The notes: generated from the letters alone by a model not told the origin. A stretch of DNA of 64,000 nucleotides from Octopus sinensis (GCF_006345805.1 NC_043014.1:9114001-9178000), one strand, 5' to 3'; shown: positions 4,575 through 57,620, numbered from the stretch's first letter. Numbers and translations: made by a program.

Positions 4575-5522
4575 TCTTTTCTACTCTAGGCACAAGGCCC
4601 GAAATTTTGGGGGAGGGGGGCCAGTCGATTAGATCGACCTCAGAACGCAACTGGTACTCAATTTATCGACCCTGAAAGGATGAAAGCAAAGTCGACCTCG
4701 GCGTAATTTGAACTCAGAATGTAAACATGGACGAAATACCTATTTCTTTACTACCCACAAGGGGCTAAACACAGAGAGCACAAACAAGGACAGACAAAGC
4801 GATTAAGTCGATTATATCGACGCCAGTGCGTAACTGGTACTTAATTTATCGACCCCGAAAGGATGAAAGGCAAAGTCGACCTCGGCGGAATTTGAACGCA
4901 GAACGTAGCGGCAGACGAAATACCTATTTCTTTACTACCCACAAGGGGCTAAACACAGAGAGGACAAATAAAGACAGACAGACGGATTAAGTCGATTATA
5001 TCGACCCCAGTGCGTAAGTGGTACTTATTTAATCGACCCCGAAAGGATGAAAGGAAAAGTCGACCTCGGCGGCATTTGAACTCAGAACGTAGCGGCAGAT
5101 GAAATACCTATTTCTTTACTACCCACAAGGGGCTAAACACAGAGAGGACAAACAAGGGCAGCCAAACGGATTAAGTCGATCATATCGACCCCAGTGCGTA
5201 ACTGGTACTTATTTAATCGACCCCGAAAGGATGAAGGAAAAGTCGACCTCGGCGGCATTTGAACTCAGAACGTAGCGGCAGATGAAATACCTATTTCTTT
5301 ACTACCCACAAGGGGCTAAACACAGAGAGGACAAACAAGGGCAGCCAAACGGATTAAGTCGATCATATCGACCCCAGTGCGTAACTGGTACTTATTTAAT
5401 CGACCCCGAAAGGATGAAAGGCAAAGTCGACCTCTGCGGAATTTGAACTCCGAACGTAACGGCAGGCGAAATACTGCTACACATTTCGCCCGGCGTGCTA
5501 ACGATTCTGCCAGCTCGCCGCC
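4575..5522 (-). repeat. Head-to-tail array of five SINE-A units (one head, ~184-bp headless units)
   Basis: Junction gaaatacctatttcttt at 4733, 4917, 5101 and 5284. Confidence 0.9.
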
Positions 5523-14073: not shown

Positions 14074-15071
14074 TTTTGGCAAGGCACATTTAGTGCGTAG
14101 GATGTTCGGCTCACGATTGCCTGGTCGTGCGTTTAAACGTTGCTCCAGCCCACTCAGATGGCAAAAATGAGTTGTATCTGTTATTCTAAGGGTCATTCTG
14201 TTTCACACTGAGTCTCCCTGAGAACGTTAGCGGTACGTATGTCTGTGGAATGCTCAGTCACCTGCATGTTAACGGATGGACTTGAACACTTGTCTTCGTA
14301 CCGACGGAGTACCAGTTCTTTTTTTAGTATTTTTAGACACTAGTATAATGCCATGTCAGAAACCGAACACGATCTGTGGTTCTCTAGGGCAAACTTTTTT
14401 TCGGTAATTTTGTTCATTTGATTATCTTATCATCTCGTTCGGAATTAGCATACTAAATAAATAACTGAACGTCATTATTATTTTAATTAATGACTTTTGG
14501 AAAACACAGGTAATTGTTGAAGACAGGTAGCAAATGCCTACACACGGTTTCTTTATTAGTCACAAGGGCCTAAACATAGAGGGGACAAACAAGGACAGAC
14601 AGTACACCACAGAGGGTACAATACTTAGACCGAATATGATGAGATGATTATACAATAATGGGGTTATGAATGGCTGCATGCGCCCCTCATCACATGCATT
14701 AACATTAATATTTTTAAACTGTCCGTTTTTATCATGTATTTAACTAACACTTAATTATCGTCTACCATTACAATTATTTGAACCGTTATGTACGTTCTAT
14801 AAAATTCTTCTATTTTCTGATATTATTAAACATAACATAAAACACTGTTTCTTTTTCCTTTTTTCTCCTTTTTCTTTTTCCTGTGGATTTGACATATTTA
14901 CTTTTTAGTAATATTTCATTAGTGGTTCGATTTCTACTAATTCCACTACTGGTGGCAATTCTTTGAATTCCACCCTTACTCCTGATGGGTCAACATTATC
15001 TCCACACATTTCTTGCAGTCTCTTATAACTTTCCTCTTCAATTACTATCGCCTTCATGTTCTCTGCATATA

Positions 15072-15432
15072 CTCTTTTACTTGTTTCAGTCATTTGACTG
15101 CGGCCATGCTGGAGCACCGCCTTTAGTCGAGCAAATCAACCCCGGGACTTATTCTATCGGTCTCTTTTGCCGAACCGCTAAGTGACGGGGACGTAAACAC
15201 ACCAGCATCGGTTGTCAAGCAATGCTAGGGGGACAAACACAGACACACAAACATATACACACACACTTATATATATATATATACATATATACGACAGGCT
15301 TCTTTCAGTTTCCGTCTACCAAATCCACTCACAAGGCTTTGGTCGGCCCGAGGCTATAGCAGAAGACACTTGCCCAAGATGCCATGCAGTGGGACTGAAC
15401 CCGGAACCATGTGGTTGGTAAGCAAGCTACTT
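15072..15432 (-). mobile_element. SINE-B, 3' part; its 5' end lies at 16944-16978, split by the gag-only element
   Basis: SINE-B sequence resumes exactly after the duplicated agcaagctactt. Confidence 0.85.
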
Positions 15433-16943
15433 TATTTCAACTATTTTGCCATAAAGGCATTACATAGGGGGACACTACAAAAACATGTGGGGACATATAA
15501 CAATTAAAAATAAATGGTACTGTGAGTGACATGAAAATGAACGTGAGAAAATAAATTAAGTTTATGATAACATGCATGATATCTGAAAATGAAGTATGAA
15601 ATATGACGAGTGCTGCTCTCTCACCCCCTTTGAGCACACACCACTCGCTGCCTTTGAGTCTGAATTCTTCTCTAATCTCTGGTCTAGTCCTTCTTTTTCC
15701 ATTCTCGCTATCACTTAAAGACAACTTTCTTTCGCAACCTTTTTCACCGGGGGAGGGGTTTTCTGAATTCTGTGGTGTCTGCTCTTTTTTCTTTTTCTTT
15801 TTTCTTGTGGGGAAAGGGAGTGGGTGGGTCTGGTGTCTGTATGGGGCGGGTGGGTCTGAGTGGTCTTGGGTGGGATGGAGTTGGACTGGGGTACCATTTC
15901 ACACTCAGTGTTCTTTCTTTTCTTCCTCTTCTTACTTCTGCTCTTGCTACTATCCATCTCTTCCTCCTTTCGTCCGTCTTTGTCTTCGTCCTCTTTTTTC
16001 TTCTTTGTCTCCGCAACTGGTTCATCTATTTTTTCCCCTTTTTTCTTCTTAGGGGGCAGTGTGCTCTTTTCTTCTGTAGGGGGCAGTGTGCTCTAATGTG
16101 GCCTTTTTGGCCACATATAAAGCACCGCGGGGTTCTGCCTTCTACCCATACTCTCAGTACCATTTCTCCCACTGACACCGTTTCCGCCAAATTTTCCAGC
16201 TCCTTCGCCTCCGCTTGTATGGTCATTTCCAGTAGTTTTCCTTTGTAACTTCTTTCCTCTGTCTCTGTGGCTTGGAGGACAGTCAACCTCCTCACTTCCA
16301 ACGAGGACGGCTGCCGCAACCCAAGCCACCTTTATGTCAGGTGGAATTCCTTCTACCCTCACCTTAGAATTTTTTCCTTCCAAGATAAGAGGGTAGAAGC
16401 AGCAGTTCCTCAGCTTTTACGGTTGCACTTGCCAGCCTTCTCGCCTCCTCCTCTGTTTTAAACTGGACAACCACCGTCCCATATCCGCTTCCGTTTGCTA
16501 TGTATGTTACTTCGTTCGAAAGCCCCTTGAGAGCTTTTTCTATTTTTTCCATATTCATCTGCTCCACTCTCCTACTCTCCACTGAGTGCACCTTGTAGGT
16601 GATGGTTTTTCTTTCCATATTCATCATGACCGTTTTCGGGGGTAGTAACTTTACGTCACTTCCCACCTTCTGTGTCATCTTATACAGCTCCTTCAGTTCA
16701 GTCAGGTCCACTTCCTTTCTCTTCACTCCCGCCGGTCAGCGCAGCAACTCTTCATTTTCTCCAAATGTTGGTCCATCCTGTTCACCGCCTTAACGAGCTC
16801 CTCCGCAGATGTGGACAGCTCGTACTCGCTAAGGTCCGAATACATTATTTTCCACTCGCCAACAAACCGCTGGCGAGCAGCTCAAAGGATTCTGTCCGCC
16901 TAGTCAAAACTTGACACAGTAAACAACTCGACGCATGCGCGTT
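15433..16943 (-). mobile_element. gag/ORF1-only retroposon, copy 1 (~1.5 kb, 12-bp TSD)
   Basis: TSD agcaagctactt at 15421-15432 and 16944-16955; no RT or endonuclease between the TSDs; ends ...gcc tttat ggc aaaatagttgaaata. Confidence 0.85.
15437..16845 (-). pseudogene. Frameshifted ORF1/gag-like protein (RRM-like region + CCHC knuckle RCFICGQKGHIRAHC)
   Basis: Segments in different frames (MYSDLSEYELSTSAEELVKAVNRMD; 16364-16726; 16093-16383; 16026-16319; 15437-15724) are colinear with the copy 3 protein. 24-bp duplication RAHCPL at ~16053-16094. Confidence 0.8.
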
Positions 16944-17359
16944 AGCAAGCTACTTACCACACAGCCACTCCTGCGCCTTATATATGTATGCTAGTACTTT
17001 CACTCTTACTATTTGATTAAACTTGGGTATTTTCTTCCCTGTTTCTACATTCTTCGGGTAGGTTACGTAATATCATACACCATTTCCTCTTTTATTTTCT
17101 TTCTTTATTTTGACTTTTCTCTTCTCTCTTTTCGTCCTCGACACTAAACACTCTCCATCTCTTCTTTGCCCAGCTGAATTTCCGAATCCTTTCCCACCGG
17201 ACCAACTGGGATCTTTACTTGTAGCTCCACTTTCTTTTTACTTTCTTTCTCTGTCACCCTCTTAGCTTCCTTCCTGATGACCTCCTTCACAGTTTCTTTC
17301 CTCATATCTTCTCTCTTCTTTTTCTGTTTCTCTGGCCAAGAACCTATCCCTCTCCTCCT

Positions 17360-17755
17360 CTCTTTTATTCTTTTACTTGTTTCAGTCATGTGACTGCGGC
17401 CATGTTGGAGCACCGCCTTTAGTCGAGCAAATCGACCCCGGGACTTCTTTGTAAGCCCAGTACTTATTCTATCGGTCACTTTTTGCCGAACCGCTGATTT
17501 ACGGGGACGTAAACACACCAGCATCGGTTGTCAAGCAATGCTAGAGGGACAAACACAGACACACAAACATACATATATATAATATATACATATATACGAC
17601 AGGCTTCTTTCAGTTTCCGTCTACCAAATCCACTCGCAAGGCATTGGCCGGCCCAGGGCTATAGCAGAAGACACTTGCCCAAGATGCCACGCAGTGGGAC
17701 TGAACCCGGAACCATGTGGTTGGTAAGCAATCTACTTACCACATAGCCACTCCTG
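17360..17755 (-). mobile_element. SINE-B inserted in gag copy 2
   Basis: Consensus match; probable aataaa TSD. Confidence 0.85.
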
Positions 17756-18033
17756 TTTATTATTTTTTTTTTTACAATAGTTGTATCATCATCTGCTTCC
17801 TTTGTCTCGACTTGTTCTACCTGGTCCCCGCTCTCTTGTCTCTCCACCTGCTCCGCTTGTTGCTTTTTCTGGGTGCACCATACCTTCATGTGGCCCTTAT
17901 CACCACATCCACAACATATAGGCGGCCTGCCCTCTACCTCCATTCTCAATGCAAAGCCGTCAGGCAGCACTATCTCTTCCGCAATCCCATTTAAGTCGTC
18001 CACTGTTGCCTGGATAGGAAGCTCTATCCTATA

Positions 18034-18207
18034 TAGGCGCAGGAGTGGCTGTGTGGTAAGTAGCTCGCTAACCAACCACATGGTTTCGGGTTCAGTCCCA
18101 CTGCGTGGCATCTTGGGCAAGTGTCTTCTGCTATAGCCCCGGGCCGACCAATGCCTTGTGAGTGGATTTGGTAGACGGAAACTGAAAGAAGCCTGTCGTA
18201 TATATGT

Positions 18208-18281
<74 letters not shown>

Positions 18282-18507
18282 ATGTGTGTGTTTGTGTGTC
18301 TGTGTTTGTCCCCCTAGCATTGCTTGACAACCGATGCTGGTGTGTCTACGTCCCCGCCACCTAGCGGTTCGGCAAAAGAGACCGATAGAATAAGTACTGG
18401 GCTTACAACGAATAAGTTCCGGGGTCGATTTGATCGACTAAAGGCGGTGCTCCAGCATGGCCGCAGTCAAATGACTGAAACAAGTAAAAGAGTAAAAGAG
18501 TAAAGAG
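18034..18507 (+). mobile_element. SINE-B inserted in gag copy 2
   Basis: Full consensus from ggcgcaggagtggc to the gagtaaaa tail. Confidence 0.85.
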
Positions 18508-18843
18508 TATATCCCCAGTAGTCGACCTTGTTGGTTCCAGGCAGCAAATGTCTACACACTTTTTGTAATAAATCATGATTCTTTCATGTTTCCCCTTCGT
18601 TGGCTCTCTCTGCTGTACCTCACCCCTCTTTACCTCTGTTGCTAGTAATCTCGTCTCTGCTTGCCCTTCCTTCTCACTCATGTCTCGACACTGATTTCTT
18701 TATTACCCACCAGGGGGCGACGTAGAGTGGGACACTACAAAACATTGGGGACATAGAACATAACAATTAAAATTATGAAGAATGAATTTTTAGATGAAAA
18801 AATGATAATATGAAAGCGATGCTAACGGCCCCATCCGTCAGCA

Positions 18844-20203
18844 TCACTTACCTGTCCTTTGGTTTTCACTTTCACTCAGATGTTCATTCCCAATACGAAG
18901 ACCATCCATATCCATTCTTACTCCGAAATACTCCTCCATATTTTCCACGAATTCATCGCTCATTCTTGTGTCTTTCACCTCCCAATTCTCCCTTTCACAC
19001 CTCGACATAAACTCATCTATTCTCTTCTTTTCAATCACTGCATACCTGGTCTCGCCTATTTCATACCATTTATACTCCTCCATTACCCTTTTAACTTCCT
19101 TCTCTTCCGTCATAGTATAAATGTTCGGTATGGGTTCGTTTTCTATGTGTTGTTTTTGCGTGTTCTTTTTTTTGTTTTCTTGTTGGAGGGGAGCGGGTGG
19201 TTTCACTGTCTGCAGGGAATGGGTGGGACTCAGAGGGTGTGGGTGGTGTTGGGGTTCAATATTGTTCGGTCTTCTTCCTCTCTTTCTTTTTCTCCTCTCC
19301 TCGACCCATTCGTTTTGGTCTTCCTCTCCTGTTGTTTCACACTCTGCCTGCTCTTTGTTTTCTTTCTCTCCTTGTATCTCCGTAACGGTTTCCTTGGGGG
19401 TGGGGGAGGGCAGAAAGCTCTTATGTGGCCCCTCAGACCACACTTATAGTACCTTGGTGCGCTGCCATCCACCCACACTCTCATGACGATGTTTCCTATA
19501 TAAATATTATCTGCTATCCTTTTAATTATCTCCTCCTCTGCTTGAATACTTATTTCCAGCGTTTTTCCATGCCATCCTTCGCTCTTTACGGTGGCCTGTA
19601 GTATGTCCACCTCCTCTTCTAAGTCCTTTATCACTGCTGCTGTGACCCATTCTCCTTCTATGTGGGGAGGGGTATCCCCTCCACCCTTATCCTCGTTGTT
19701 CTTTTATTCTTGTATGTTGGTAGCATATATACTTTATCTGTTTTTAACGATTTAGCCGCCATCCTTCTCGCTATACTTTTACTACCAAACTGTACCACAA
19801 TTGTTCCGTATTCCATTCCTCTTGCTACGTACACAACTTCCTCCTCCACTCTTTTTAATGCCTCCTCTATGTCTTCCATCTTTACTGTTTCCACTATTTT
19901 GTTGTCTTTGACGAATGTTCTATATTTTATTACTCTTTCTTCGAACCATTGGCTCCGCTTTTCTGGCGGTAGTAGTTTTACTTCACCTCCCTCCTTTGTC
20001 ATATAGGCTTGATAGCCTGGTAGCTTTTCCAGGTCTATCTCTTTATCTCCTGTTTTTCTTGCAGCTCCCGCATATGTCTTCCCGGGCTTTACGTCCATCT
20101 TCTTTACGGCATCCATCAATTCGTCCTCGGAGGTCGACACCTCCGATAGACTTACGAACAGTCTTTCCTCGTGCGTCTCTCCCATTAGGGAGGGGCGGTC
20201 CAT
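18844..20203 (-). pseudogene. Near-intact ~450-aa ORF1/gag-like protein with two frameshifts
   Basis: ORF pieces 19658-20203, 19230-~19660 and 18844-~19400 join at two C-rich runs. Has KTYAGAA motif, RRM-like region, and knuckle RYYKCGLRGHIRAFC (first Cys replaced by Tyr). Confidence 0.8.
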
Positions 20204-20271
20204 TACTCTATGTCTGTCTCAATAGACAGACACCGGCCGACAGCCCAACAACAGTGCGACAAGGTCGCGCG

Positions 20272-20350
20272 TATAACAAAACGTAAAAAATCCGAATAAC
20301 AAAACGTAAAAAATCCGTATAACAAAACGTAAAAAATCCGTATAACAAAA
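20272..20350 (-). repeat. 3.4 x 23-bp tandem repeat in the 5' UTR of gag copy 3
   Basis: tataacaaaacgtaaaaaatccg at 20272, 20295, 20318, partial at 20341. Confidence 0.9.
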
Positions 20351-20634
20351 AGGTACAGTTCAACAATAAATCCAAACAACAAAATATCAATAACTCACGC
20401 GATAGTCATGTCTCGACACTCTGTCTTCAAAAAATTCTATGTCGATTTAAATCCTATTTAAAAATAAATACTGGTATTCATATAATGGACTAAACCACGC
20501 CAATGGAATGCCCCAACATAACCGCAGTCTAAAGGTCAAAGTTCGTAAAAGAATAAAGTTACATGCAACTTTTGAAAATATTTTCCCCTTTTATCATATC
20601 TCTTTTTGTCTTATCCTTTTTTCTTTTTTTTTTT

Positions 20635-24050: not shown

Positions 24051-24644
24051 ACGAGCTGGCAGAAACGTTAGCACGCCGGGCGAAATGCTTAGCGGTATTT
24101 CGTCTGTCTTTACGTTCTGAGTTCAAATTCCGCCGAGGTCGACTTTGCCTTTCATCCTCTCGGGGTCGATAAATTAAGTACCAGTTACGCACTGGGGTCG
24201 ATGTAATCGACTTAATACCTATGTCTGTCCTTGTTTGTCCCCTCTGTGTTTAGCCCCTTGTGGGTAGTAAAGAAATAGGTATTTCGTCTGCCGTTACGTT
24301 CTGAGATCAATTTACGCCGAGGTCGACTTTGCCATTCATCCATTCGGGGTCGATAAATTAAGTACCAGTTACGTACTGGGTCGATGTAATCGACTTAATG
24401 CCTATGCCTGTCCATGTTTGTCTCCTCTGTGTTTAGCCCCTTGTGGGTAATAAAGAAATAGGTATTTCGTCTGCCGTTACGTTCTGAGTTCAAATTCCGC
24501 CGAGGTCGACTTTGCTTTTCATCCTTTCGGGGTCGATAAATTAAGTACCAGTTACGCACTGGGGTCGATGCAATCGACTTAATCCGTTTGTCTGTCCTTG
24601 TTTGTCCTCTCTACCTTTAGCCCCTTGTGGGTAGTAAAGAAATA
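24051..24644 (+). repeat. SINE-A head-to-tail trimer
   Basis: Junction aaagaaata|ggtatttcg at 24278 and 24461 (183-bp period). Confidence 0.9.
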
Positions 24645-25319
24645 GGTATATGTGTACTTTAGTTTGGTTTCGTGTATGTGCCATTAATTAATGATGGCAA
24701 TCGGAAACTGAAATTTAATGATTGAGACAATCGCTAGGTGGTGCATAGTGTTAATGCATATTTCTTAATATTGAAATTCCTAGCGGTACCGCAAGAATTC
24801 TGTTCAGGTGTAGCAATGGTCTATAATGAGAGTGACGTCATTATTTTAGATGACGTCCATCAAGCGACAATTTATTCATCGGTCGACAACTGACACCACA
24901 CAACCGCAATGCCACTGCACGCACGCACACACATCTACACATACACACACACACAAACACACACCCAGATAATTGCATTCCAGAACTTTCCAGACTTTTT
25001 CAAGAGAGATAATTATTCACCTGAAAGAAGTACACTACTCTAATTTCCTTCAAAGTAGGATCGTCTGCCTTCAATGAAATTGCCGTGAACCATCCACTTC
25101 CTGAAGGCCCCATGGCAGTCCCCAATATGAAGATGCCAACGACACATCATAGCTTCTTTCATCATCTTCAAAACAGCTGTCCCTGAAGTTCTCCTCCAGT
25201 TTGGGGAACAATTGAAAGTCAAAGCGAGCAACGCATGGATTATACGGATGGTGAAAGAGGCGTTTCTGATACCCATCTCCGTCAAATATTTGGTTACCAC
25301 TGTTCTCGTTACAGAGCAA

Positions 25320-26899: not shown

Positions 26900-28430
26900 C
26901 GACTGTGAGAAACAACTGCAATGGAAGCAAACATCCTACCTTAACTTCTCATCCTCCCACCCTACCCACCCTACCCACACCAAACTCTCCATTCCCCACT
27001 CTAAATCCCTCCGTCTCCGCAGGCTCTGCAGGGAGGACCGTGAATTTGACACTCAGTCTCAACTCATGGTTCTCCAATCCACCCTACGTTGAAATCGCCT
27101 CACCATTACTCACACTGCCCTTGTCCGGGCACGTTCTCCGGACAGTTCCTCTGCACTTTCTCCTCTATTTCTTTACTACCCACAAGGGGCTAAACATAGA
27201 GGGGACAAACAAGGACAGACAAACGGATTAAGTCGATTATATCGACCCCAGTGCGTAACTGGTACTTATTTAATCGACCCCGAAAGGATGAAAGGTTAAG
27301 TCGACCTCGGCGGAATTTGAACTCAGAACGTAACGGCAGACGAAATACCGCTAAGCATTTCGTCTGGCGTGCTAACGTTTCTGCCAGCTCACCGTCTTTC
27401 TCCTCCCTCTGCACTTTCTCCTCGTACCCACTCCACCCTTACCCGTCTCCCGTTTCCCTAACCTACCACTCCTCCCCTCCCCTGCAACGCCCCATTCTTC
27501 GAACCTTCTGGCGACATCGGTCCGACCACTACACATCGTGCATCTTCTTTGACCTCGCTCTTCCCTCACCTGCGTGACCTCCTGGCTCACAGTTTCTTCC
27601 CTACCCCTGCCTCCCAGCCTGGCTCCCTCCCCAACTCCCGCCCACGGTATCGCACCTGCCCCTATCTCTCCAACACAAACACTGGTACCCATCACCGTTT
27701 CAGTGAAGTCACCGACTCCTTTATCTGCACCTTTAGTAATGTACTCCTTTAGTACTGCATCTCTTGCTCTCCCTGTCCTTCGCTGTACTCTCTTTCTTTT
27801 ACTCTTTTACTTGTTTCAGTCATTTGACTGCGGCCATGCTGGAGCACCGCTTTTATAGTCGAGCAAATCGACCCCGGGACTTATTCTTTTGTAAGCTCAG
27901 TACTTATTCTATCGGCCTCTGTGGCCGAACCGCTAAGTAACGGGGACGTAAACACACCAGCATCGGTTGTCAAGCAATGCTAGGGGGACAAACACAGACA
28001 CACAAACATACACGCACACACATATATATATACATATATACGACGGGCTTCTTTCAGTTTTCGCCTACCAAATCCACTCACAAGGCATTGGTCGGCACTA
28101 AAAGAAGTGACACACAAATCTTTTATCTTTTTGTTTCCTGATGGGGTCGTAGCGTACGTCCAAGACATCAAACTCGGCAATAACACCCAGATCTCGCCCC
28201 ATTTCCACTCTACTGGGCATTCGGTACAATATCTGTCTGCATTCGGACTGTCTCTGCAAAGGAGCCACACCCCTCCCACATTCGAATACCTCACTCCACC
28301 TACACACCAACATACCGCCTACCGCGGTACTCTCAATACTCACACAAACACCACTATACAAACCCCCATACGCACTGTTCAACCCATTACTAACACAAAC
28401 ACCTTTCAACTCCACATACTAACACCGTCC
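26900..28430 (+). pseudogene. Penelope-like element C-terminal/GIY-YIG endonuclease remnant, interrupted by SINE-A (27166-27396) and SINE-B (27790-28096)
   Basis: LRDLLAHS..QPGSLPNSRPRYRTCPYLSN..DSFICTFSNV and VQDIKLGNNTQISPHFHSTGHSVQYLSAFGL resemble PLE endonuclease regions. Confidence 0.65.
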
Positions 28431-33629: not shown

Positions 33630-34452
33630 ATACTCTTTACTCTTTACTCTTTTACTTGTTTCAGTAATTTGAGTGCGGCCATGCTGGAGCACCGCCTTTA
33701 TTCGAGAAACTCGACCCCGGGACTTATTCTTTTGTAAGCCCGCTACTTATTCTATCGGTCTCTTTTGCCGAACCGCTAGGTAACGGGGACATAAACACAC
33801 CAGCATCGGTTGTCAAGCAATGCTAGGGGGACAAACACAGACACACAAACACACACACGCATATATATATATACATAGAACTACGGGCTTCTTTCAGTTT
33901 CCCTCTACCAAATTATCCACTCACAAGGCTTTGGTCGGCCCGAGGCTATAGTAGAAGACACTTGCCCAAGGTGCCACGCAGTGGGACTGAACCCGGAACC
34001 ATGTGGTTGGTAAGCAAAGTTACTTACCACACAGCCACTCCTGCGCCTAATACCAAAGAAGACATTATATATGCATATATAAGACGGGCTTCTTTCAGTT
34101 TCCGTCTACCAAATCCACTCATAAGGCTTTGGTCGGCCCGAGGCTATAGTAGAAGACACTTGCCTAAGGTGGGTGCCATGCAGTGGGACTGAACCCGGAA
34201 CCATGTGGTTGGTAAGCAAAGTTACTTACCACACAGCCACTCCTGCGCCTAATACCAAAGAAGACATTATATATGCATATATAAGACGGGCTTCTTTCAG
34301 TTTCCGTCTACCAAATCCACTCATAAGGCTTTGGTCGGCCCGAGGCTATAGTAGAAGACACTTGCCTAAGGCGGGTGCCATGCAGTGGGACTGAACCCGG
34401 AACCATGTGGTTGGTAAGCAAGCTACTTACCACACAGCCACGCCTGCGCCTA
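33630..34452 (-). mobile_element. SINE-B with local tandem re-duplication of its 5' half plus flank
   Basis: Three copies of the head region joined by taataccaaagaagacattatatatgc spacers. Confidence 0.8.
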
Positions 34453-56850: not shown

Positions 56851-57085
56851 TTCATTTTTATTTTATTTATTTATTTTTTTCTTCCCTTTTACGATCCCTC
56901 TTGATCGAAAACCTACGCCACCCCCTTTTTTTGTTTCTTTTGTTTTTTGTTTTTTTCATCCCCCAAAAGAAAAGCTCTACCTTGTAACTTGTCCCATCTG
57001 TGTGCAGCCCTGTGTGGCCAATAAAGAAACTTATCTATCTATCTATCTATTTATACATTACTTCATATATATATATTATATATGG

Positions 57086-57620
57086 CGTAATGGCGCGATG
57101 GCCCAGTGGTTAGGGCAGCGGACTCGCGGTTGTAGATAGGCGGCGAGCTGGCACAAACGTTAGCGCGCCGGACGAAATGCTTATCTGTATTTCGTCTGCC
57201 GCTACGTTCTGAGTTCAAATTCCGCCGAGGTCGACTTTGCCTTTCATCCTTTCGGGGTCGATAAATTAAGTACCAGTTACGCACTGGGGTCGATGTAATC
57301 GACTTAATACCTATGTCTGTCGTTGTTTGTCCCCTCTATGTTTAGCCCCTTGTGGGTAATAAAGAAATAGGTTGTAGATTCCCAGATCGGGCGTTGTGAC
57401 TGTTTATTGAGCGAAAACACCTAACGCTCCAAGAGGCTGCAGCAGGGTGGTGGTGGCGATCCCTGATGTACTCTTTCGGCACAACTTTCTCTCACTCTTT
57501 CTTCTGTTGGCCTGCTCGCTTAGCCAGCAGGGTGGCGTCATTTGAAGGCTAAAACAATGTGAAGCGCATTGTGACTAGCGATGTGTAGCAACATCTGATA
57601 GCCTGGTCGGTCACAGTGAT
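57086..57620 (+). mobile_element. SINE-C (tail type 2) with nested SINE-A (~57140-57369, 10-bp TSD ggttgtagat)
   Basis: SINE-C head and body resume after the duplicated ggttgtagat. Confidence 0.8.

What the first reader, a model, noticed from the sequence alone, without database searches (positions are those of the whole stretch)
15433..20405. Family of gag/ORF1-only, TSD-flanked retroposons with no RT
Seen: two complete units, 15433-16943 (TSD agcaagctactt) and 18693-20405 (TSD tcatgtctcgacact), each holding only a 5' UTR, one RRM-like/CCHC ORF and a short 3' UTR. Both 3' UTRs share atgttttgtagtgtccc and end in a small stem-loop plus gaaat(a/c). A third, more diverged member lies between them. 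The proteins are clearly homologous but divergent, so this is an old family, not one accidental LINE truncation. 5'-truncation removes ORF1, not ORF2, so keeping ORF1 plus a 3' tail is the reverse of normal LINE decay. Known analogues are HAL1 (half-L1) and Drosophila HeT-A. Inference: a coding non-autonomous retroposon that supplies its own RNA-binding protein and borrows RT in trans; I know of no description in cephalopods.
Basis: partly seen in the sequence, partly recalled or inferred. Interest (0 to 1): 0.88.

Follow-up and report, generated by a model that had tools for sequence, protein, structure and literature searches.

The report
ORF1-only "half-LINE" retroposons in octopus
The window holds two target-duplication-flanked copies and one wrecked copy of an octopus mobile element that keeps only the RNA-binding ORF1 gene of a LINE plus that LINE's 3' end, so it must borrow a reverse transcriptase; this kind of element is known from mammals and insects (HAL1, HeT-A, Ag-Sponge), and I found no description of one in cephalopods.

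Summary
Both units lie on the minus strand: unit 1 at 15433-16943 (12-bp TSD) and unit 2 at 18693-20405 (15-bp TSD). Each has a 5' UTR, one ORF1 (two RRM-like domains plus a CCHC knuckle) and a short 3' UTR, with no endonuclease or RT. Both ORFs are broken by frameshifts or stops.

Related DNA from the Octopus vulgaris assembly shows this is a real, recurrent family. At least eight independent loci on seven chromosome records carry the same ORF1 stop, ~150-nt 3' UTR and tail, and never an ORF2. Some copies have intact 453-470-aa ORFs. dN/dS among dispersed copies is 0.15-0.47. At least two more ORF1-only lineages exist.

A full-length partner LINE was found: a homologous ORF1 followed by APE, RVT_1 and zf-RVT, an L1/Tx1-like architecture. 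Its only DNA similarity to the ORF1-only elements is the last 40-58 nt. An abundant tRNA-like SINE in the window ends in the same tail (16 copies).

The best reading is a protein-coding, non-autonomous LINE derivative, mobilised in trans through the shared tail. This is a new member of a known kind (HeT-A, HAL1, Ag-Sponge), not a new category. One feature stays unexplained: these elements often sit in precise head-to-tail arrays.

The parts
15433..16943 (-). Unit 1: decayed ORF1-only retroposon copy (5' UTR, broken ORF1, truncated C-terminal domain, 3' UTR and tail)
   Evidence: no APE/RT
15421..15432 (.). Unit 1 TSD, copy next to the element's 3' end (AGCAAGCTACTT on +)
   Evidence: empty site rebuilt
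16944..16955 (.). Unit 1 TSD, copy next to the element's 5' end
16029..16845 (-). Unit 1 ORF1 remnants (N-terminal region, two RRM-like domains, CCHC knuckle CFICGQKGHIRAHC), in four frame pieces
   Evidence: Pfam zf-CCHC 8e-4 and RRM_3 2.7e-3
15433..15485 (-). Unit 1 3' tail: TTGTAGTGTCCCCC...TGCC-TTTAT-GGCA...GAAATA; the hairpin arms are compensated relative to the consensus
18693..20405 (-). Unit 2: ORF1-only retroposon copy of the 'HO' subfamily (5' UTR, ORF1 with C-terminal domain, 151-nt 3' UTR)
18678..18692 (.). Unit 2 TSD (TCATGTCTCGACACT on +), copy next to the element's 3' end
20406..20420 (.). Unit 2 TSD, copy next to the element's 5' end; the target was the start codon region of the third member
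18844..20203 (-). Unit 2 ORF1, about 452 codons in three frames (20203-19661; 19667-19410; 19431-18847; stop 18844-18846): N-terminal region, RRM-like 1, RRM-like 2, CCHC, K/E/P-rich linker, about 90-aa C-terminal domain
   Evidence: model pLDDT 85.8; tandem-RRM fold matches
20204..20405 (-). Unit 2 5' UTR, with three 23-bp direct repeats at 20270-20350
18693..18745 (-). Unit 2 3' tail: TTGTAGTGTCCCAC...GCCC-CCTGGT-GGGT-AATAAAGAAATC; 83% identical over 41 nt to the 3' end of the full-length LINE
17760..18030 (-). Third member, CCHC-containing piece (approximate bounds)
   Evidence: tblastn 36% over 69 aa, E 1e-8; ORF list
18510..18692 (-). Third member, N-terminal coding piece starting at ATG 18681; unit 2 separates it from its 5' UTR and a SINE (about 18037-18505, +) separates it from the CCHC piece (approximate bounds)
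16996..17345 (-). Probable K/E-rich C-terminal remnant of the third member, downstream of a second SINE insertion (about 17355-17757); assignment is tentative and no recognisable tail remains
57120..57371 (+). Example of the tRNA-like SINE that ends in the same tail (…GTTTGTCCCCTCTATGTTTAGCCCCTTGTGGGTAATAAAGAAATAG); 16 such tails occur in the window

Best explanation
These are copies of non-autonomous, protein-coding LINE derivatives, here called half-LINEs. Each transcript carries a 5' UTR, a complete ORF1 and a short 3' UTR. ORF1 has two RRM-like domains, a CCHC zinc knuckle, a charged linker and a small C-terminal domain. The last ~50 nt of the 3' UTR are the recognition tail of an octopod L1/Tx1-like LINE.

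Shown: the family is a recurrent, TSD-flanked unit without APE or RT. Its ORF1 is homologous to ORF1 of a full-length LINE found in O. vulgaris. The ORF has been under purifying selection while the family diversified. The LINE, at least three ORF1-only lineages and an abundant SINE share the same conserved 3' tail, which has a 4-bp hairpin just before AAUAA(A/U)(G/A)AAA.

Inferred: the element's own ORF1p coats its RNA. The partner LINE's ORF2p recognises the shared tail, nicks the target, primes reverse transcription there and leaves 10-16-bp TSDs. This is what a SINE does, with a self-supplied chaperone added. The window copies are dead relics, nested in one another and in SINEs.
For: Structure and TSDs.

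Recurrence without RT:
- Unit-2-type copies occur at L001 (OX597839.1), L002 (OX597815.1), L004 (OX597816.1), L005 (OX597830.1) and in arrays at L003 (OX597821.1) and L008 (OX597827.1).
- All have the same 5' start, the same ORF1 stop, a ~150-nt 3' UTR and the terminus GTGGGTAATAAAGAAAT.
- L002a has a 15-bp TSD with one mismatch and L001a a 16-bp TSD.
- L007 (OX597833.1) is a further ORF1-only lineage with a 10-bp TSD.
- The '493-type' lineage also ends in the tail without an ORF2.

Coding state: intact ORFs of about 453-470 aa are present in L003f, L003h, L004a and L005a.

Selection: dN/dS is 0.15-0.47 among dispersed copies. Between the window copy and the O. vulgaris copies, pN is 0.25-0.28 and pS 0.65-0.72. 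Array neighbours give about 1.

Partner LINE: ORF1 of 438 aa at 30-38% identity, then Exo_endo_phos, RVT_1 and zf-RVT. The best solved relative is human L1 ORF2p, E 2e-37.

Tail:
- The only DNA similarity between the half-LINEs and the LINE is the terminal 41-58 nt, at 83-97% identity.
- In 14 of 15 tails the hairpin pairs fully, with arm variants GCCC/GGGT, GTCC/GGAT, TGCC/GGCA, AGGC/GCCT, AACC/GGTT and GCTC/GGGC.
- The same tail ends 16 SINE copies in the window.

Fold: AF2 model pLDDT 85.8. Top PDB matches are tandem RRMs such as IMP3 RRM12, E 2e-5.

ORF1 homologues from O. vulgaris, O. sinensis, O. bimaculoides and Argonauta hians are short stand-alone proteins with no RT domain.
Against: - No functional evidence: transcription, ORF1p production and trans-mobilisation were not tested.
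- The loci sampled were reached through annotated protein fragments, so they are not a random genome sample. Copy number is unknown.
- The LINE subfamily found ends ...AATAATAAAACAAC, whereas unit 2 and the SINE end ...AATAAAGAAAT. The exact driver of the unit-2 lineage may be a LINE subfamily I did not see.
- No 5' UTR similarity to the LINE was detected, so the 'bipartite internal deletion' origin is not demonstrated at the 5' end.
- The hairpin is tiny and not more stable than shuffled sequence.
- Part of the amplification is clearly DNA-level tandem duplication, not retroposition.
- The window's own species was not identified. Its unit 2 is only about 57% identical in protein to the O. vulgaris copies.
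Confidence: 0.85

Rival explanations
1. These are accidental, independent internal deletions of full-length LINEs that removed ORF2, not a self-propagating family.
For: [quoted passage not shown] Internal deletions of LINEs are common.
Against: The same ORF1 stop, 3' UTR and terminus recur at eight or more independent loci on seven chromosome records, and in the window copy that has diverged to pS about 0.7. ORF1 is only 30-38% identical to the LINE's ORF1, and outside the last ~50 nt there is no DNA similarity. The split is therefore ancient, and the ORF1-only state has been propagated. dN/dS is well below 1.
Confidence: 0.03
2. These are retrocopies or duplicates of a domesticated host gene (an L1TD1-like ORF1-derived cellular gene), not a transposable element.
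For: Intact ORFs under purifying selection. Gene models in O. vulgaris include these sequences.
Against: UTRs and exact termini are conserved along with the ORF. TSDs flank single copies. The terminus is the LINE/SINE tail. Many decayed, nested copies exist. The gene models are chimeras that splice element pieces to unrelated exons over 5-500 kb.
Confidence: 0.03
3. The family spreads mainly at the DNA level, as a tandemly repeated satellite-like unit amplified by unequal crossing-over, and retroposition is marginal.
For: Homogeneous head-to-tail arrays occur: L003 (about 1.72-kb period, 97-98% identity), L008 (at least 9 units) and the LINE array L006 (5273 bp, 99.4%). dN/dS is about 1 between array neighbours.
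Against: Solo, TSD-flanked insertions lie in unrelated targets: window units 1 and 2, L002a and L007. L004a is also a solo copy in unique flanks, slightly 5'-truncated, but no TSD of at least 8 bp was found for it. Arrays cannot explain dispersed copies on many chromosomes or purifying selection between them. This is a complement to retroposition, not an alternative.
Confidence: 0.08

Closest known systems
HAL1 (half-L1) of mammals
   Same: A non-autonomous LINE derivative that encodes only ORF1p and depends on the parent LINE's ORF2p. HAL1 arose several times independently (PMC5753468), as several ORF1-only lineages did here. The partner LINE's ORF2 is L1-like (APE, RT, zf-RVT; best solved relative is human L1 ORF2p).
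   Different: There is no Transposase_22/L1-type ORF1; ORF1 here has tandem RRM-like domains plus a CCHC knuckle. There is no poly(A) tail. Instead, a specific ~50-nt tail with a small hairpin is also used by a SINE, which is the 'stringent' type of recognition. The host phylum is different.
HeT-A of Drosophila (with TART/TAHRE)
   Same: It encodes only a Gag/ORF1-like protein with CCHC, borrows RT from a related autonomous element, and is found in oriented head-to-tail arrays mixed with its autonomous partner. The L005 chain HO-493-493-LINE and the arrays in L003 and L008 resemble this.
   Different: HeT-A belongs to the Jockey clade, has a poly(A) end and is telomere-specific without TSDs. 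Here the loci are interstitial in the assembly and solo copies have ordinary TSDs.
Ag-Sponge of Anopheles (CR1-derived), and the class 'ORF1-present bipartite non-autonomous LINEs' (Kojima 2018, PMC5786205)
   Same: It retains an ORF1p-coding region plus the LINE 3' end in a LINE group that uses a specific 3' tail rather than poly(A). This is the recognised category the octopus elements fall into.
   Different: Different LINE clade and host. 5'-end identity with the partner LINE was not found here. No sequence comparison with Ag-Sponge was possible with these tools.
tRNA-derived SINEs that share a LINE 3' tail (stringent SINE/LINE pairs)
   Same: The terminal tail is the only DNA shared with the LINE. 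The octopus SINE in this window carries the very same tail.
   Different: The half-LINEs are 1.5-1.9 kb, have no pol III tRNA-like head and encode a selected protein.

Membership tests
ORF1-present non-autonomous LINE derivative (kind: HeT-A / HAL1 / Ag-Sponge) | Encodes a protein homologous to ORF1p of an autonomous LINE | tested here: met
   tblastn of LINE ORF1 against the half-LINE copies gives 33-38% identity, E 1e-40 to 1e-43. Alignment A1 has 20 invariant columns, including the CCHC.
ORF1-present non-autonomous LINE derivative (kind: HeT-A / HAL1 / Ag-Sponge) | Lacks endonuclease and reverse transcriptase | tested here: met
   There are no APE/RT hits in the window. In all unit-2-type, 493-type and L007 copies the ORF1 stop is followed by 150-510 nt of UTR and the terminus.
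ORF1-present non-autonomous LINE derivative (kind: HeT-A / HAL1 / Ag-Sponge) | 3' end shared with the autonomous partner | tested here: met
   The terminal 41-58 nt are 83-97% identical to the LINE 3' end, and nothing else is similar.
ORF1-present non-autonomous LINE derivative (kind: HeT-A / HAL1 / Ag-Sponge) | 5' end shared with the autonomous partner ('bipartite' origin by internal deletion) | tested here: not met
   blastn (word size 7) finds no 5' UTR similarity between any half-LINE and the LINE. Only protein-level ORF1 homology links the 5' halves, so the 5' UTR may have been replaced or have diverged.
ORF1-present non-autonomous LINE derivative (kind: HeT-A / HAL1 / Ag-Sponge) | Dispersed copies with target-site duplications and a recurrent unit structure | tested here: met
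   TSDs of 12 and 15 bp in the window, an empty site, and TSDs at L001a, L002a and L007. Common ends are shown.
ORF1-present non-autonomous LINE derivative (kind: HeT-A / HAL1 / Ag-Sponge) | Mobilised in trans by the partner's ORF2p | not testable with these tools
   Needs a retrotransposition assay or polymorphic insertions.
HAL1 proper (mammalian L1-derived) | L1-type ORF1 (Pfam Transposase_22: coiled coil, RRM, CTD) and a poly(A) 3' end | tested here: not met
   There is no Transposase_22 hit at E up to 1 or 0.01. The elements end in ...GTGGGTAATAAAGAAAT(A/C) with no A-run. It works like HAL1 but is not a member.
HeT-A / telomeric Jockey-clade elements | Terminal (telomeric) head-to-tail arrays, no TSD, poly(A) junctions | tested here: not met
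   Arrays exist but lie at interstitial assembly positions. Solo copies have TSDs, and junctions have no poly(A).
LINE ORF1p with RRM plus CCHC architecture (Khazina and Weichenrieder type, recalled from memory) | RRM fold(s) followed by a CCHC zinc knuckle | tested here: met
   The AF2 model (pLDDT 85.8) has two beta-alpha-beta-beta-alpha-beta modules. Foldseek top hits are all tandem RRMs, E 2e-5 to 1e-3, probability about 1, though TM is only 0.25-0.40 because the domain orientation differs. Pfam zf-CCHC scores 24.6 bits against a cutoff of 20.8 in the 493-type and 19.9 bits in unit 1.
L1/Tx1 group (partner LINE) | One ORF2 with APE, RT and a C-terminal zf-RVT/CCHC motif, plus placement in the L1/Tx1 clade on an RT tree | tested here: inconclusive
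   The domain architecture is met. The best PDB relative is human L1 ORF2p, but other APE-LINE clades have no solved structure and no RT phylogeny was run. L1-Tx1 is reported as ubiquitous in molluscs (PMC10294476).
SINE | Short, non-coding, with a pol III promoter head derived from a small RNA | tested here: not met
   The elements are 1.5-1.9 kb with a selected ORF of up to 493 codons. Only the tail is SINE-like.

The most novel reading that the evidence does not exclude
The LINE, its several ORF1-only derivatives and the SINE form one tail-sharing community. Its members integrate preferentially right at the end of an existing tail or at the 5' end of a resident element, or are concatenated by RT template jumping. 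This would build oriented, mixed head-to-tail chains and long homogeneous arrays at interstitial sites. It would be a HeT-A/TART/TAHRE-like array-building system outside telomeres and outside insects, with the ORF1-only elements as the main array formers.
Probability: 0.2. Interest if true: 0.7.

Novelty: new member of a known kind. Interest (0 to 1): 0.45.

Why it matters
Octopus genomes are roughly half repeats, and their LINE activity has drawn attention. Published work on octopus LINEs, however, describes only RTE and Dong elements (PMC9115989). This finding adds three things:
- an L1/Tx1-like LINE with an RRM-CCHC ORF1;
- several long-lived ORF1-only parasites or partners of that LINE;
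- the link to a very abundant SINE through one shared 3' tail.

It gives a natural system with three grades of dependence on one reverse transcriptase: full LINE, ORF1-only element and SINE. That system could be used to ask what a self-supplied ORF1p buys a non-autonomous element.

On the practical side, these elements contaminate current O. vulgaris gene models. ORF1 pieces are fused to HAUS1-like, Cep192/HYDIN/CFAP-Ig-like and other host exons, so a curated consensus would improve annotation.

Tried and rejected
- Word-indexed protein search with the unit-2 protein found only 7 O. vulgaris models, all matching the C-terminal domain. A profile of seven ORF1s found one more. The index is too insensitive for this family. 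The exhaustive HMMER search was needed and gave 200 hits.
- PDB sequence search with ORF1 gave nothing meaningful.
- The first AlphaFold run, with an 8-row alignment, was poor (pLDDT 42). It was redone with 66 homologues.
- RNAalifold on the tail alignment gave only a 3-bp stem. MAFFT put the diverged tails out of register, so the count of structure pairs could not be used fairly. Arms were instead read per sequence in a script.
- Single-sequence folding shows no unusual stability.
- No TSD of at least 8 bp was found for L004a or L005a.
- Looking up the window's own 199-aa ORF to identify the source assembly found nothing.
- The P0004 locus could not be fetched because the gene model spans 500 kb.
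- TRF cannot see the 1.7-kb arrays because its period limit is 500. Self-blastn was used instead.
- P0005 appeared to fuse the C-terminal domain to an endonuclease motif. That suggested an ORF2 follows, but the gene model spans 11 kb and stitches separate elements together.

Full report
**1. What is in the window**

Both units read on the minus strand.

- **Unit 1** occupies 15433-16943. It is flanked by AGCAAGCTACTT at 15421-15432 and 16944-16955.
- **Unit 2** occupies 18693-20405. It is flanked by TCATGTCTCGACACT at 18678-18692 and 20406-20420.
- **Empty site.** Unit 1 interrupted a tRNA-like SINE. Joining its flanks with one TSD copy restores that SINE at 95% identity to the intact paralogue at 17355-17775.
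- **Nesting.** Unit 2 landed on the start codon of a third, older family member. Two SINE insertions also split that member.
- **Layout.** Each unit has a 100-200-nt 5' UTR, one ORF1-type reading frame and a 3' UTR. In unit 2 the 3' UTR is 151 nt.
- **Coding state.** The reading frames are dead. Unit 2 needs two frameshifts to read about 452 codons. Unit 1 has a stop and frameshifts and has lost most of the C-terminal domain.
- **Similarity.** The two proteins are 32-39% identical (E 2e-40), and the DNAs are 53% identical.
- **No enzyme genes.** A tblastn search with LINE endonuclease and RT queries finds nothing in the whole 64-kb window.

**2. The protein**

- Pfam gives zf-CCHC near or above threshold and a weak RRM_3 hit.
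- An exhaustive HMMER search with the unit-2 RRM-CCHC region found 200 relatives. They are mostly stand-alone proteins of 100-600 aa.
- The ten top hits I looked up are from O. vulgaris, O. sinensis, O. bimaculoides and Argonauta hians, plus two unnamed records. They are named 'uncharacterized' or 'CCHC-type domain-containing'.
- None of the 66 relatives I aligned has an RT or endonuclease domain.
- With those 66 as an alignment, AlphaFold gives a confident model (pLDDT 85.8, pTM 0.71). It has two beta-alpha-beta-beta-alpha-beta modules followed by the knuckle.
- The best PDB matches are all tandem RRM proteins: IMP3 RRM12, Raver1, NONO/PSPC1 and hnRNP A1 UP1. E-values run from 2e-5 to 1e-3.

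'RRM-like/CCHC' is therefore correct. More precisely, the protein has two RRM-like domains plus one CCHC knuckle.

**3. It is a recurrent RT-less family**

Seven O. vulgaris gene models match the unit-2 C-terminal domain. I fetched the DNA around five of them, plus the loci of two ORF1-core homologues from the HMMER search. All are from assembly GCA_951406725.2.

- **Distribution.** Unit-2-type copies, which I call HO, occur on OX597839, OX597815, OX597816, OX597830, OX597821 and OX597827.
- **Common structure.** An alignment with flanks shows the same 5' start, the same ORF1 stop, the same ~150-nt 3' UTR and the same terminus ...GTGGGTAATAAAGAAAT(A/C). Beyond those ends the flanks are unrelated.
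- **No ORF2.** No copy is followed by an ORF2.
- **Intact copies.** Four copies have intact ORFs of about 453-470 codons.
- **TSDs.** L001a has a 16-bp TSD, and L002a a 15-bp TSD with one mismatch.
- **More ORF1-only lineages.** There are at least two more:
  - The '493-type' has an ORF of 493 aa with a different C-terminal domain and a ~300-345-nt 3' UTR.
  - The L007 element has an ORF of 379 aa, a ~510-nt 3' UTR and the TSD GCTGGGTTCG.
  - Window unit 1 may represent a further lineage.

**4. Selection**

I computed Nei-Gojobori estimates.

| Comparison | Result |
|---|---|
| Dispersed HO copies | dN/dS 0.15-0.47 |
| Window unit 2 vs O. vulgaris copies | pN 0.25-0.28, pS 0.65-0.72 (ratio about 0.2; dS is saturated) |
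| Neighbours inside one array | dN/dS 0.99 |

The ORF was therefore needed while the ORF1-only lineage diversified, and it decays neutrally after insertion or duplication. All these copies share the same RT-less architecture, so that state predates their divergence.

**5. The partner LINE and the tail**

- **Full-length LINEs.** L001 and L005 carry full-length LINEs, and L006 carries three in a row.
  - Each has an ORF1 of 438 aa, 30-38% identical to the half-LINE ORF1s.
  - ORF2 follows immediately and has Exo_endo_phos, RVT_1 and zf-RVT.
- **Clade.**
  - The closest solved relative of both the endonuclease and the RT is human L1 ORF2p.
  - RT homologues include Argonauta.
  - This is an L1/Tx1-like architecture. 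L1-Tx1 is reported as ubiquitous in molluscs (PMC10294476).
  - I ran no RT tree, so the clade is not settled.
- **Shared DNA.** The only significant similarity between the LINE and the half-LINEs is the terminal 41-58 nt. It is 83% identical for HO and window unit 2, and 97% for the 493-type.
- **Tail consensus.** The tail reads TTGTAnTGTCCC..TCTnTGT..GCCC-CTTGT-GGGT-AATAA(A/T)(G/A)AAA.
- **Hairpin.**
  - The 4-bp stem just before AATAA can pair fully in 14 of 15 diverse tails.
  - Compensated arm variants include TGCC/GGCA in window unit 1 and AGGC/GCCT in L007.
  - It is not thermodynamically unusual, so the support for it is comparative only.
- **SINE.** The same tail ends an abundant tRNA-like SINE, with 16 copies in this window.

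The LINE, the half-LINEs and the SINE thus share one 3' recognition module. This is the classical signature of trans-mobilisation by a 'stringent' LINE.

One caveat remains. The LINE subfamily I saw ends ...AATAATAAAACAAC, as does the 493-type. HO and the SINE end ...AATAAAGAAAT. The exact driver of HO may therefore be a sister LINE subfamily that I did not sample.

**6. Mechanism**

*Shown:* the architecture, the TSDs, the homology to LINE ORF1, the absence of RT, purifying selection and the shared tail.

*Inferred:*
- The element is transcribed from its 5' UTR and translated into ORF1p.
- ORF1p coats its own RNA in cis.
- The partner ORF2p binds the tail, nicks the target and carries out target-primed reverse transcription, leaving 10-16-bp TSDs.

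Several TSDs begin with (G)AAA(T/C)- or AAG-like bases resembling the element's last bases. This hints at microhomology priming, but the sample is too small to call it a preference.

**7. Comparison with known elements and novelty**

Kojima (2018, PMC5786205) explicitly recognises 'ORF1-present' bipartite non-autonomous LINEs. The examples are HeT-A (Jockey clade), HAL1 (L1 clade) and Ag-Sponge (CR1 clade). HAL1 arose several times (PMC5753468). The octopus elements belong to this functional kind.

They are not members of the named families:
- They are not HAL1: there is no Transposase_22 ORF1 and no poly(A).
- They are not HeT-A: the loci are not telomeric, solo copies have TSDs, and the clade is different.

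The 'bipartite' criterion of a shared 5' end was tested and not met.

Octopus LINE papers that I could search describe RTE and Dong elements only (PMC9115989). Repbase and Dfam could not be queried. My verdict is a new member of a known kind, with multiple parallel lineages and a three-tier LINE/half-LINE/SINE tail community as its most interesting aspects.

**8. Unexplained: head-to-tail arrays**

- **Homogeneous arrays.**
  - HO forms arrays at L003 (15.7 kb, period about 1.72 kb, 97-98% identity) and L008 (at least 9 units).
  - The LINE forms a three-unit array at L006 (period 5273 bp, 99.4% identity).
  - The SINE forms 183-184-bp arrays in the window.
- **Mixed chains.** Mixed, same-orientation chains also occur: HO-493-493-LINE-X in L005, and HO-493 in L001 and L002.
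- **Junctions.** Each complete tail abuts the next element's 5' end without a spacer.
- **Shared end point.** Three chains end against the same unrelated, decayed LINE, called X here.
- **Location.** All these loci are interstitial in the assembly.
- **Interpretation.**
  - The high identity and dN/dS of about 1 fit DNA-level amplification of the homogeneous arrays.
  - The mixed chains need another explanation, such as tail-directed integration or RT template jumping.
  - I could not discriminate between these.

Noticed in passing
window 57120-57371(+), 27173-27400(-), and tails at 1453, 7582, 9133, 44765, 47192, 47436, 63565: An abundant tRNA-like SINE (head GGCGAGCTGGCAGAAACGTTAGCACGCC...GTTCAAATTCCGCCGAGGTCGAC) ends in the same ~50-nt tail as the LINE and the ORF1-only elements. 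There are 16 tails in the window. It may correspond to one of the octopus SINEs described in the 1990s (OK/OR; recalled from memory, not checked).
   Followed up: partly
window 4623-5474 and 24094-24649: These are tandem arrays of a 183-184-bp unit (4.6 and 3.0 copies, 90-92% match). The unit is that SINE truncated at GGTATTTCG and joined directly to the preceding tail ...AAAGAAATAG. The same junction recurs at window 63565(-) and at L001 30221(-), so it is either a SINE-derived satellite or a recurrent microhomology junction.
   Followed up: partly
L003 5237-20991 (OX597821.1) and L008 1-15651 (OX597827.1): Long head-to-tail arrays of the ORF1-only element (period about 1.72-1.75 kb, 97-98% identity, with a three-unit higher-order periodicity of 5186 bp in L003). 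Some units have intact ORFs. Both arrays end against the same unrelated decayed LINE ('X', 5' CATGGAGGAAAGCACC...).
   Followed up: partly
L006 2438-17026 (OX597840.1): Three full-length copies of the partner LINE (ORF1, APE, RT) lie in a head-to-tail array with a 5273-bp period and 99.4% identity.
   Followed up: partly
L005 8650-18905 (OX597830.1); L001 8848-12335; L002 8760-12290: These are mixed same-orientation chains (HO-493-493-LINE-X, and HO-493 twice on other chromosomes). Complete tails abut the next element's 5' end with no spacer. The first L003 unit and L005a also share about 170 nt of upstream flank.
   Followed up: partly
O. vulgaris gene models P0003, P0004, P0005, P0008, P0001/P0002 (loci L004, L001, L003, L008): Annotated 'hypothetical proteins' are chimeras that splice pieces of the ORF1-only element to unrelated exons: HAUS1-like, Cep192/HYDIN/CFAP-Ig-like, a large extracellular-domain protein, and an endonuclease fragment 11 kb away. 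Others string three array units together as exons. These are probably annotation artefacts from unmasked repeats, although exonisation was not excluded.
   Followed up: partly
window 15060-15432 + 16944-16990(-), 17355-17757(-), 18037-18505(+), 33883-34452: A second, different tRNA-like SINE (GGCGCAGGAGTGGCTGTGTGGTAAGTAGCT...) contains an internal (TA)n/(TG)n microsatellite and ends ...GACTGAAACAAGTAAAAGAGTA. It is the target of unit 1 and an invader of the third member. A 202-bp tandem array of its 5' part lies at 33883-34452.
   Followed up: no
window 56990-57050: A further tail variant (…CTTGTCCCATCTGTGTGCAGCCCTGTGTGGCCAATAAAGAAAC) runs straight into a (TATC)n microsatellite. The second LINE in L001 (tail near 20000) likewise ends in (TATC)n. 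This suggests a related LINE/SINE lineage with microsatellite-extended 3' ends.
   Followed up: no
window 20270-20350(-): The 5' UTR of unit 2 contains three 23-bp direct repeats (TTTTGTTATACGGATTTTTTACG). They are absent from the O. vulgaris HO copies, which have a (GTT)n stretch there instead.
   Followed up: no
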